A DNA stretch of 63,223 nt, counting the filler, from Olpidium bornovanus S191 (lineage: Eukaryota; Fungi; Olpidiomycota), in NCBI GenBank assembly GCA_017911155.1. It is 28 parts of 28 records of this genome, joined end to end, with 100 filler letters (N's around TTAATTAATTAA, not from the genome) between each part and the next. Parts side by side here need not be neighbours in the genome. Positions count along the whole stretch, not along the records: positions 12,511 to 14,466 come from JAEFCI010002369.1; 27 more parts are not named here. One strand, given 5' to 3'. Below the pieces are notes generated by a model, which made no database searches, was not told the origin of the DNA, and saw only the letters and a list, made by a program, of their open reading frames with translations. Every line of letters starts with the position of its first letter. Positions within the stretch are counted from its first letter, which is position 1. The translations under genes were made by a program, and so were the position numbers. Shown in pieces: positions 12,511 through 14,566 of the stretch.

Positions 12511-14287
12511 CATGAGGTTACTCGGCCGCTATCGAAATGCTAAGATCTTGTCTTCCGTCAACGGGTTGTCGACCAGGCTGCATCAAATATTGCGGCAATG
12601 CTGCTCAACAACGCGTGTGCGGACGCGCGGGTTGTTGCCGGAATGCTCGAAGCGATACAGTTCCTTTTTGGAATAGAAAAGCTTGGTGATCTCTTTTGTG
12701 CCGACGTACGGACCTTAAGAACGTTCCACGGCTGGTTTGGCCAACGTTTGAAACGATTGGTCTTGAAGTTGACCGACTCCGCACCGGTTGCCCTGCTTCG
12801 CATGCCGGACAGAATTCCCAGTCGACGGCGTTGGCTTCGGGCATATCGCTGAGACTGTTCGACAGGAATTGGGCAGTGCGCGACACCACGCTGGAATTCT
12901 TTTCCGAGCTCTTTGAAAAGGTTCGATGCACGGATGAGCGTTCCAGGCCAATCATGGGCTTGGATGCGAGGATTAACAGGGACAGAAACACTCATTGTTT
13001 TGGTAGATTCCGCATAGGATAACCAGTGCATCACGCTTTGCGGTTGCCTGGGAGTTCCCAAAGAAAGTCGCCCAACGGATCGCCGACCGCGAGCCGTACG
13101 TCCGTGCTTCCGCGCTCAAAGCATTAACCGTACGCGTCGCATGGGAAAAGGTGTACCGCGGCTGCACTTGCGGCCCGGTTCTATGACGAAACGCAGTGCG
13201 GAAGTTGCTGACTCTGAGTTACACTTTGCTTCTCTCGTTTTCCGGCGTTCTCGCAGGGGATCATTCTCCACCCAGCAGGCTGGGAGGCGGTGAGCCCGGT
13301 TCTGCTGACGTCCTCTTTTTTCAGCTCCTTGGGACGGCTGGATGCTGCGCCGGACGAAACCTTACGGGAAGAGGAAACGCGGCTCGACGTGTTACTCAGC
13401 GATACAACGGCTCTCGTCAGGCGAGCCGCTCTGCGGTTCCTGACGTCGCTCATCGCCCACAGAGGGCACCTGGACATGCTCTTTGACAAGGGCAAGCTGC
13501 TCAGGTTGTGGTGGAGGGGTAGTTTTGTTTTACTTCCTGCCGGTGCGCTTGTGGAGGGGGGCGTTTTCGTGTTCCACATTGTTTACCGGACGTTTGGCTC
13601 TCCGACCGGCGACAGCGCGAAGCTTATTCACCAGCTTCTTGAGGACGACGACCACGAAGTTCGGACGGAACTGTGCAAGCTCCTGGGTTCCGCTTGGCAT
13701 TACTCGTGCCACTCGCCCGTTGACTGCAATGCGCTCCGCACGCAAGAGCAAACCGCGGCACGGCGTGATGCCGCGGCCGCTGATTATCACCAACACGTCG
13801 GGTGCCTCTTCTTCGAGATGGACGGAGTTTGCACCCTGGGAATTGCGGTAAGGACTGGCCGTTTGACGCACAAATTTGTGGAGCGCCCTGCGGGCCACTG
13901 CGCTCAACCTAGGGGCGGCGCGCGTTCCAAGAAGTGACGCTTTTCGCTTGAATCACCAATAAAACACAGGCGAGGGACGCCAGCCGACTGGTGCGCACCA
14001 CAGCCCGCGGCGTCCTGCGGTCCATAAAGGAGGACGTGGCCGGCTTGATATCAGGTCCGCCGCAACAACCAGGCGACCTCCCAGGGAAGTTCAGCCTCAA
14101 GCGGCGGCTTGCAGAAGTGGAGCTGCCGCGCCTGCGGGAGTTTGCCGACTGGCTGGCACAGGCGGACCTCGAGGACGAGCGGAGCAGCCGCGACTGCTAC
14201 TCGCAGGTCGATGACCTCGTCAGTTTGGACGAGCGTCGGAGCTATGTCATTGCCCTGGGAGGACGGTGCGAGATGGACTGCGAGTAA
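12511..14287 (+). CDS. BRAT1: BRAT1-like HEAT/ARM-repeat protein, C-terminal part, spliced
   Basis: Four collinear blocks match my recollection of human BRAT1: RLFDRNWAVRDTTLEFFSEL (cf. [20 protein letters not shown]), ADREPYVRASALKAL (cf. QDPESYVRASAVTAM), SDTTALVRRAALRFL (cf. VDTEGFPRRAVMQVF), EDDDHEVRTE (cf. RDLDWEVRAQ). C-terminus is EMDCE* (cf. EADCY*). Confidence 0.75.
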
Positions 14288-14566
14288 AGGAGGGGGGGAA
14301 AAAAGGCGCCGTAAATAAGTCTTTTTGGCGCTGCCCCGCGTATCGCCGAGGAATGACGAAGGTCAGTTTGTGCCACGAGGCGGTTTAAAGGGCCGTGGCG
14401 AGTTGCTTTCCCTTTGCGCTTTGGGGCGGTGGGGGAGAGGGAGGGGAGAGGGGGGGAGGGGGGGGGNNNNNNNNNNNNNNNNNNNNNNNNNNNNNNNNNN
14501 NNNNNNNNNNTTAATTAATTAANNNNNNNNNNNNNNNNNNNNNNNNNNNNNNNNNNNNNNNNNNNN

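What the first reader, a model, noticed from the sequence alone, without database searches (positions are those of the whole stretch)
12511..14287. BRAT1 homologue keeping the terminal Asp-Cys motif: hint of Integrator cleavage-module machinery in a fungus
Seen: four collinear BRAT1-like HEAT blocks and a C-terminus ...GRCEMDCE* (stop at 14285-14287). Established: in human BRAT1 (..EADCY*) the penultimate Cys binds the active-site metal of INTS11 during INTS9-INTS11 assembly, and Integrator is absent from budding and fission yeast. Inference: conservation of the penultimate Cys implies an INTS11-like partner. The terminal Tyr is replaced by Glu, which could alter the interaction or indicate a different beta-CASP target such as CPSF73/Ysh1.
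Basis: partly seen in the sequence, partly recalled or inferred. Interest (0 to 1): 0.7.

Follow-up and report, generated by a model that had tools for sequence, protein, structure and literature searches.

The report
Expressed HEAT-repeat gene ending in Asp-Cys-Glu
The piece holds the last six exons of a real, transcribed gene for a helical-repeat (HEAT) protein that ends in ...MDCE, which resembles the human Integrator chaperone BRAT1 in outline, but no search could show that it is BRAT1 or that the organism is a fungus with Integrator.

Summary
The sequence facts hold. Spliced transcript contigs from two studies define six + strand exons (12577-14287) joined by five GT..AG introns. They give one continuous frame of 385 codons ending GRCEMDCE, with stop TAA at 14285-14287. 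Four exons each carry a HEAT-type block with invariant D-x4-V-R. All Pfam HEAT hits are below the curated cut-offs.

BRAT1 homology was not shown. phmmer of five exon pieces against PDB sequences found no BRAT1. phmmer of exons 4-5 against 1.84 billion representatives gave four weak, unspecific repeat proteins. The word search, atlas, and metagenome, genome and viral scans found nothing. AlphaFold2 models were too poor to compare.

The four blocks match generic HEAT consensus, so they do not single out BRAT1. The only specific pointer is the terminal Asp-Cys-X on a tail predicted, at low confidence, to be unstructured.

The joined protein could not be searched. The organism is coded, and its genome could not be checked for INTS11 or INTS9.

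I rate a divergent BRAT1-like nuclease chaperone at about 0.5, as inference. The main rival is an unrelated lineage-specific HEAT scaffold.

The parts
12511..12576 (+). 3' end of an upstream intron; acceptor AG at 12575-12576; the 5' exons lie outside the piece
   Evidence: both transcript contigs leave the piece at 12576 and continue with unrelated letters. Contig X1 carries 1057 more bases on its 5' side.
12577..12705 (+). Exon 1 of the piece (43 codons, phase 0)
12706..12812 (+). Intron, 107 nt, GT..AG
   Evidence: joint 12705/12813
12813..12920 (+). Exon 2 (36 codons) with HEAT block 1 (DRNWAVRD..LEF)
   Evidence: Pfam HEAT E 0.026, below cut-off..
12921..13006 (+). Intron, 86 nt, GT..AG
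   Evidence: joint, cut +2
13007..13129 (+). Exon 3 (41 codons) with HEAT block 2 (DREPYVRASAL)
   Evidence: HEAT E 0.081; the only HEAT-type PDB match is a designed alphaRep..
13130..13256 (+). Intron, 127 nt, GT..AG
13257..13504 (+). Exon 4 (82 codons + 2 nt) with HEAT block 3 (DTTALVRRAAL)
   Evidence: HEAT E 0.063..
13505..13615 (+). Intron, 111 nt, GT..AG; a multiple of three and free of stops in the exon frame
   Evidence: joint, cut +3
13616..13847 (+). Exon 5 (1 nt + 77 codons) with HEAT block 4 (DDDHEVRTEL); Cys-rich second half
   Evidence: HEAT_2 E 0.008..
13848..13969 (+). Intron, 122 nt, GT..AG
   Evidence: joint, cut +1
13970..14287 (+). Last coding exon (105 codons + TAA): three predicted helices, then a tail
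   Evidence: helices at residues 2-28, 40-64 and 70-88 of the exon, mean pLDDT 53.
14234..14284 (+). C-terminal tail of 17 residues, modelled as coil, ending D-C-E (Cys codon 14279-14281)
   Evidence: residues 89-105 have no secondary structure, pLDDT 33-36, so confidence is low. Sequence.
14288..14417 (+). 3' untranslated region as far as the transcript contigs reach
   Evidence: table 8. The contigs differ from the window only here: one base left out at 14316 and A>G at 14359.

Best explanation
The piece is the 3' half of an expressed gene for an all-helical HEAT-repeat protein. At least 385 residues are encoded here. If the 2345-nt transcript contig is complete, the whole protein is at most about 737 residues.

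The last 17 residues form a tail that is probably flexible, contains Cys and ends Asp-Cys-Glu. My preferred reading is that this is a very divergent counterpart of BRAT1. In that reading the HEAT solenoid wraps a beta-CASP/metallo-beta-lactamase nuclease dimer of the INTS11-INTS9 type. The free C-terminal tail enters the nuclease active site, and the penultimate Cys thiol binds the two metal ions. This keeps the nuclease silent and stable until it is handed to its nuclear scaffold.

Shown here: the gene, its splicing, its transcription, the HEAT-type blocks and the DCE end.

Inferred only: homology to BRAT1, the partner and the plugging mechanism.
For: - Gene model and C-terminus: spliced contigs of two studies and one continuous 385-codon frame.
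- HEAT character: four blocks with invariant D-x4-V-R and sub-threshold Pfam HEAT/HEAT_2 hits in four separate exons.
- Other frames and the opposite strand give no Pfam family hit; the only match is chance-level, E 0.077.
- The end D-C-X is rare by chance, roughly 1 in 600 from this protein's own composition. It sits on a tail that the low-confidence model leaves unstructured.
- The protein belongs to no well-conserved HEAT family. Importins, PP2A-A, TOR or TBCD would have given strong hits in 1.84 billion representatives, and only four unspecific repeat proteins appeared. This is what one expects of a fast-evolving family, and BRAT1 is described as weakly conserved yet broadly present in eukaryotes (eggNOG 5EM9B, cited in bioRxiv 10.1101/2023.08.10.552743).
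- Position of the HEAT blocks: human BRAT1 is 821 aa with annotated HEAT repeats at 495-531 and 547-574 (PMC13706764), about 250-325 residues from its end. HEAT blocks 1 and 2 here lie about 322 and 278 residues from the end.
- Mechanism in animals: BRAT1 binding blocks the INTS11 active site and escorts INTS9-INTS11 to the nucleus (bioRxiv 10.1101/2025.03.05.641556, citing Sabath 2024 and Lin 2024). That the conserved C-terminal Cys binds the metals is from my own knowledge of Lin et al. 2024, which is not held here.
- A lead from memory only, not a test: the human tail as I recall it shares a collinear DLE..RS / A-x-G-G / D-C-X pattern with exon 6.
Against: - No tool returned BRAT1. PDB phmmer at E up to 10 with every exon piece gave none.
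- The big phmmer with exons 4-5 gave none at E up to 0.001.
- The atlas gave only generic HEAT families or nothing.
- The four 'collinear blocks' are generic HEAT consensus at the usual 40-50 residue spacing and would line up with any HEAT protein.
- The last residue is Glu, not the aromatic residue of the human protein.
- No relatives were found, so conservation of the tail is untested.
- The N-terminal half was not seen.
- Presence of INTS11 or INTS9 in this organism is unknown.
- If the organism is a dikaryan fungus, the prior for Integrator is low.
Confidence: 0.5

Rival explanations
1. It is an unrelated, lineage-specific HEAT-repeat scaffold protein. The Asp-Cys-Glu end is a coincidence with no role in nuclease binding.
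For: - Every homology search was blank or unspecific.
- The HEAT blocks carry only generic consensus.
- The protein is fairly Cys-rich near its end, with 8 Cys in exons 5-6, which raises the chance of a Cys near the terminus.
Against: - D-C-X at the very end is still expected in only about 1 in 600 proteins of this composition.
- It sits on a tail predicted to be free.
- The protein has about the size and HEAT placement of BRAT1 (PMC13706764).
Confidence: 0.38
2. It is a BRAT1-like plug whose target is the mRNA 3'-end nuclease CPSF73/Ysh1 rather than INTS11, in an organism that has lost Integrator.
For: - CPSF73 and INTS11 are paralogues with the same di-metal site.
- The last residue differs from the human one (Glu instead of Tyr), as the sequence shows.
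Against: - The known Cys-donating partner of CPSF73 is UBE3D/Ipa1. It uses an internal Cys144 and is not a HEAT protein (PMC11904178, citing Lin 2024).
- Nothing here speaks for loss of Integrator, since the taxon is unknown.
- No test of binding was possible.
Confidence: 0.07
3. It is a non-functional or mis-assembled locus, for example a decaying gene whose open frame has no meaning.
For: - No relatives exist in any collection searched.
- Raw RNA runs X20 and X23, which carry the same species label, gave no reads.
Against: - Five canonical introns are removed exactly.
- 386 codons stay in frame across six exons.
- Transcript contigs have depth 10.8 and 29 in two studies.
- The raw runs were sampled at about 6%, and the table itself marks them as 'no test'.
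Confidence: 0.03

Closest known systems
BRAT1 (BRCA1-associated ATM activator 1; Drosophila CG7044), assembly factor and inhibitor of the INTS9-INTS11 Integrator nuclease dimer
   Same: - All-helical HEAT-type repeats in the C-terminal half.
- HEAT blocks about 280-320 residues from the end, where human BRAT1 has its annotated repeats about 250-325 residues from its end (PMC13706764).
- Comparable overall size: at most about 737 aa against 821 aa.
- A free C-terminal tail with Asp-Cys as the third-last and second-last residues.
   Different: - No detectable pairwise sequence similarity in exon-wise searches.
- The last residue is Glu instead of Tyr.
[quoted passage not shown]
- The partner nuclease was not shown to exist in this organism.
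Generic HEAT-repeat scaffolds (PP2A A subunit, TOR N-terminal repeats, TBCD, designed alphaRep proteins)
   Same: - The D-x4-V-R-x2-A-L repeat signature at a spacing of about 40-50 residues.
- The atlas neighbours by sequence features are these families.
   Different: - None of these families is hit at a significant level in 1.84 billion representatives.
- They do not carry a terminal Asp-Cys-X tail as a family feature (own knowledge).
UBE3D / yeast Ipa1, the Cys-donating partner of CPSF73/Ysh1
   Same: The principle is the same: a partner protein places a Cys in the di-metal active site of a beta-CASP nuclease (PMC11904178).
   Different: UBE3D is a HECT_2-type protein that uses an internal Cys144. 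The protein here is made of HEAT repeats, has a terminal Cys, and gets no HECT_2 Pfam hit.

Membership tests
BRAT1 family | Significant sequence similarity to known BRAT1 proteins (reciprocal hit or family profile) | tested here: not met
   Only exon-wise, single-sequence searches were possible. PDB phmmer with five pieces found no BRAT1 at E up to 10. The big phmmer with exons 4-5 found none at E up to 0.001. The joined model, the full-length protein and profile-profile comparison were not tested, so power is limited.
BRAT1 family | Alpha-helical HEAT/ARM solenoid with HEAT repeats in the C-terminal part | tested here: met
   There are four HEAT-type blocks. All Pfam scores are below the curated cut-offs. 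The AF2 model of exons 4-5 was too poor to confirm the fold.
BRAT1 family | Conserved C-terminal tail whose Cys next to the end binds the INTS11 metals | tested here: inconclusive
   The end ...MDCE is present and confirmed in RNA. The tail is modelled as coil at low confidence. Conservation could not be tested because no relatives were found, and metal binding is not testable here.
BRAT1 family | N-terminal CIDE-N-like region and overall length of about 800 aa | not testable with these tools
   The 5' exons lie outside the piece. Contig X1 has 1057 nt upstream, which allows at most about 352 more codons.
BRAT1 family | INTS11 and INTS9 encoded in the same genome and bound by the protein | not testable with these tools
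   Only this piece of the genome is available. No multimer prediction tool is offered.
HEAT-repeat proteins (Pfam clan of PF02985 / PF13646) | Tandem repeats of about 40 residues, each a helix pair with the D..VR..A..L signature | tested here: met
   Alignment A1 shows invariant D, V and R in four blocks spaced 44-71 residues apart in the spliced frame.
HEAT-repeat proteins (Pfam clan of PF02985 / PF13646) | Score above Pfam's gathering threshold | tested here: not met
   The best scores are HEAT 22.3 bits against 23.5 and HEAT_2 24.5 bits against 27.7, for exons 4-5 read through the in-frame intron. The whole spliced protein could not be scored.
UBE3D / Ipa1 | HECT_2-type domain with an internal conserved Cys | tested here: not met
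   No HECT_2 or related Pfam hit in any exon.

The most novel reading that the evidence does not exclude
A BRAT1-type chaperone that plugs a nuclease active site with its C-terminal Cys survives in a fungal lineage usually assumed to lack Integrator. That would mean either that the lineage keeps an INTS11-INTS9 cleavage module or that the plug has been re-aimed at CPSF73/Ysh1.
Probability: 0.12. Interest if true: 0.55.

Novelty: new member of a known kind. Interest (0 to 1): 0.3.

Why it matters
If the BRAT1 reading is right, the Cys-tail plug of the Integrator nuclease would be older and more widespread than the animal work shows. The terminal Asp-Cys-X tail would then be a simple marker for finding very divergent BRAT1 proteins where sequence searches fail.

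It would also flag this organism as one in which to look for an Integrator-type cleavage module. As it stands, the result is a well-supported gene model for an orphan HEAT protein, plus a testable lead.

Tried and rejected
- Pfam on all exon pieces gave only sub-threshold HEAT hits.
- Pfam on the opposite strand and off-frame ORFs gave nothing, so there is no antisense gene.
- Rfam found nothing.
- PDB sequence search with exons 1, 2, 3, 4-5 and 6 found no BRAT1. It returned only chance matches (RNase T, MarR) and one designed HEAT protein.
- The word search with exon 6 found nothing. It sees only proteins of 58-184 aa, so it says nothing about full-length relatives.
- The big phmmer with exons 4-5 gave four unspecific repeat proteins: a bacterial NACHT-HEAT protein, a tandem-repeat protein, an ARM-like protein and a Sel1 protein. 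None ends in D-C-X.
- Atlas searches gave generic HEAT neighbours, or nothing.
- JGI metagenome scans with exon 6 and exon 4, a GTDB genome scan and an IMG/VR scan found no relatives.
- AlphaFold2 without an alignment gave pLDDT 35.7 for exons 4-5 and 53.2 for exon 6. These are too poor for a fold search, so no fold search was run.
- Raw RNA runs X20 and X23 gave no reads at about 6% sampling, which is no test.
- The key structural papers (Lin 2024, Sabath 2024) are not held.

Left out by rule: joining the six exons into one protein for any search or fold. Everything was done exon by exon, by reference.

I did not type a BRAT1 sequence from memory into any tool. My recalled tail resemblance is reported as a lead only.

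Full report
**What is in the piece.** The 1956 bases (12511-14466) are 58.7% G+C with no N. Laying public runs on it gave one transcript-like contig in each of two runs from different studies: X1 (study P1, 2345 nt, depth 10.8) and X2 (study P2, 1999 nt, depth 29).

- Both contigs match the window in six blocks and skip five stretches that begin GT and end AG on the + strand: 12706-12812, 12921-13006, 13130-13256, 13505-13615 and 13848-13969.
- The exons are therefore 12577-12705, 12813-12920, 13007-13129, 13257-13504, 13616-13847 and 13970 onward.
- Added up, the coding part is 1158 nt, exactly 385 codons plus TAA in one unbroken frame. That is strong internal support for the model.
- Both contigs leave the piece at 12576 and carry on with other letters (1057 nt more in X1). 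The 5' half of the gene lies outside the piece. If X1 is complete, the protein has at most about 737 residues.
- The contigs are labelled only 'RNA?'. Exact removal of five canonical introns is what shows they come from spliced RNA.
- Two raw RNA runs with the same species label gave no reads at about 6% sampling. The tool itself calls this no test.

**Check of the observation.**

- The C-terminus reads ...GRCEMDCE, with the Cys codon at 14279-14281 and TAA at 14285-14287. The transcript contigs agree letter for letter through the whole coding part.
- Four HEAT-type blocks are there, one each in exons 2 to 5. Aligned to each other they share an invariant D-x4-V-R followed by a hydrophobic pattern (alignment A1).
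- Pfam gives each block a weak HEAT or HEAT_2 match. Exons 4-5 together come close to the curated cut-offs but stay below them.
- Other frames and the opposite strand give nothing. Rfam gives nothing.

That joined step was left out.

- phmmer against all PDB chain sequences with exons 1, 2, 3, 4-5 and 6 returned no BRAT1 chain even at E up to 10. The only HEAT-type match was a designed alphaRep protein, for exon 3.
- phmmer of exons 4-5 (read through the stop-free in-frame intron) against 1.84 billion representative proteins gave four hits, E 1.6e-5 to 9e-4. All are unspecific repeat proteins and none ends in D-C-X.
- The word search with exon 6 found nothing, but it cannot see full-length proteins.
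- The atlas gave generic HEAT families for exons 4-5 and nothing usable for exon 6.
- Two metagenome scans, a prokaryote genome scan and a viral contig scan found no relatives.
- With no relatives there is no alignment. AlphaFold2 gave pLDDT 35.7 for exons 4-5 and 53.2 for exon 6. I ran no fold search on such models.

**What the negatives mean.**

- They show that the four 'collinear BRAT1-like blocks' carry no BRAT1-specific signal that a single-sequence search can see. The shared letters (D..W.VRD, D.E.YVRASA and so on) are the general HEAT consensus at the usual spacing, so any HEAT protein would line up.
- They do not exclude remote orthology. The queries were 36-197 residues. BRAT1 is described as weakly conserved in domain composition while BRAT1-related genes are broadly present in eukaryotes (bioRxiv 10.1101/2023.08.10.552743). 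The E-value bar in a library of 1.84 billion is high.
- The blank also shows that this is none of the well-conserved HEAT families, which would have given strong hits. Not even the organism's own annotated protein is in the collection.

**What speaks for the BRAT1 reading.**

- The end D-C-X is expected in roughly 1 in 600 proteins of this composition.
- It sits on the last 17 residues, which the low-confidence model of exon 6 leaves without secondary structure after three helices.
- Human BRAT1 is 821 aa with annotated HEAT repeats at 495-531 and 547-574 (PMC13706764), about 250-325 residues from its end. The first two HEAT blocks here lie about 322 and 278 residues from the end.
- In animals, BRAT1 blocks the INTS11 active site and escorts INTS9-INTS11 to the nucleus (bioRxiv 10.1101/2025.03.05.641556, citing Sabath 2024 and Lin 2024).
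- That a conserved C-terminal Cys binds the metal ions is my own knowledge of Lin et al. 2024. That paper and Sabath 2024 are not held.
- From memory, the human tail shares a collinear DLE..RS / A-x-G-G / D-C-X pattern with exon 6. This is a lead, not a test, and I gave no recalled sequence to any tool.

**Rivals.**

- An unrelated orphan HEAT scaffold with a chance DCE end fits all tool results equally well. I give it 0.38.
- A plug aimed at CPSF73/Ysh1 is possible in principle. However, the known Cys-donating partner of CPSF73 is UBE3D/Ipa1, which uses an internal Cys144 and has a different fold (PMC11904178). I give this 0.07.
- A dead locus is unlikely given exact splicing and an intact frame. 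I give it 0.03.

**What could not be tested.**

- The organism: run labels are coded. The runs show only a soil-associated species whose label covers rather divergent strains, since DNA runs with that label hold only 8-17% of the words. 'Fungus' is therefore unverified.
- The presence of INTS11, INTS9, INTS4 or WDR73 in the genome.
- Conservation of the tail.
- Docking of the tail into a nuclease.

**Verdict.** The gene model is real, expressed and now well defined. It encodes an orphan HEAT-repeat protein with an Asp-Cys-Glu end. The BRAT1/Integrator idea is a sensible, cheaply testable lead at about even odds, not a finding. [quoted passage not shown] Even if the reading is true, the result would be a new, very divergent member of a known family rather than a new kind of system.

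Noticed in passing
window 13505-13615: The fourth intron is 111 nt, a multiple of three, and has no stop in the exon frame. Retaining it would insert 37 residues between two HEAT blocks without breaking the frame. An ORF finder reads straight through it as the 215-239 aa frame-3 ORF.
   Followed up: partly
window 14423-14466: A G-rich low-complexity run, about 3.5 copies of GGGGGAGAGG, sits at the very end of the piece. It starts just after the point (14417) where both transcript contigs stop. It may mark the contig end, or a spot that sequencing and assembly do not cross.
   Followed up: no
window 14316 and 14359: Both transcript contigs, from two studies, differ from the window in the same two 3'-UTR places: one base left out at 14316 and A>G at 14359. 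They are identical to the window in the coding part. This is a strain difference or a small error in the window's assembly.
   Followed up: no
window 12511-14466 (runs): DNA runs with the same species label hold only 8-17% of the sampled 31-letter words, and two large RNA runs with that label gave no reads at 95% likeness. The species label seems to cover strains that differ by several percent. Soil metagenomes hold 7-16% of the words.
   Followed up: no
window 13616-14284: Cys is unevenly spread. There is none in exons 2-4 but eight in exons 5-6, including C-x3-C at the very end (R-C-E-M-D-C-E). The two tail Cys residues might act together, for example as a small metal-binding pair.
   Followed up: no
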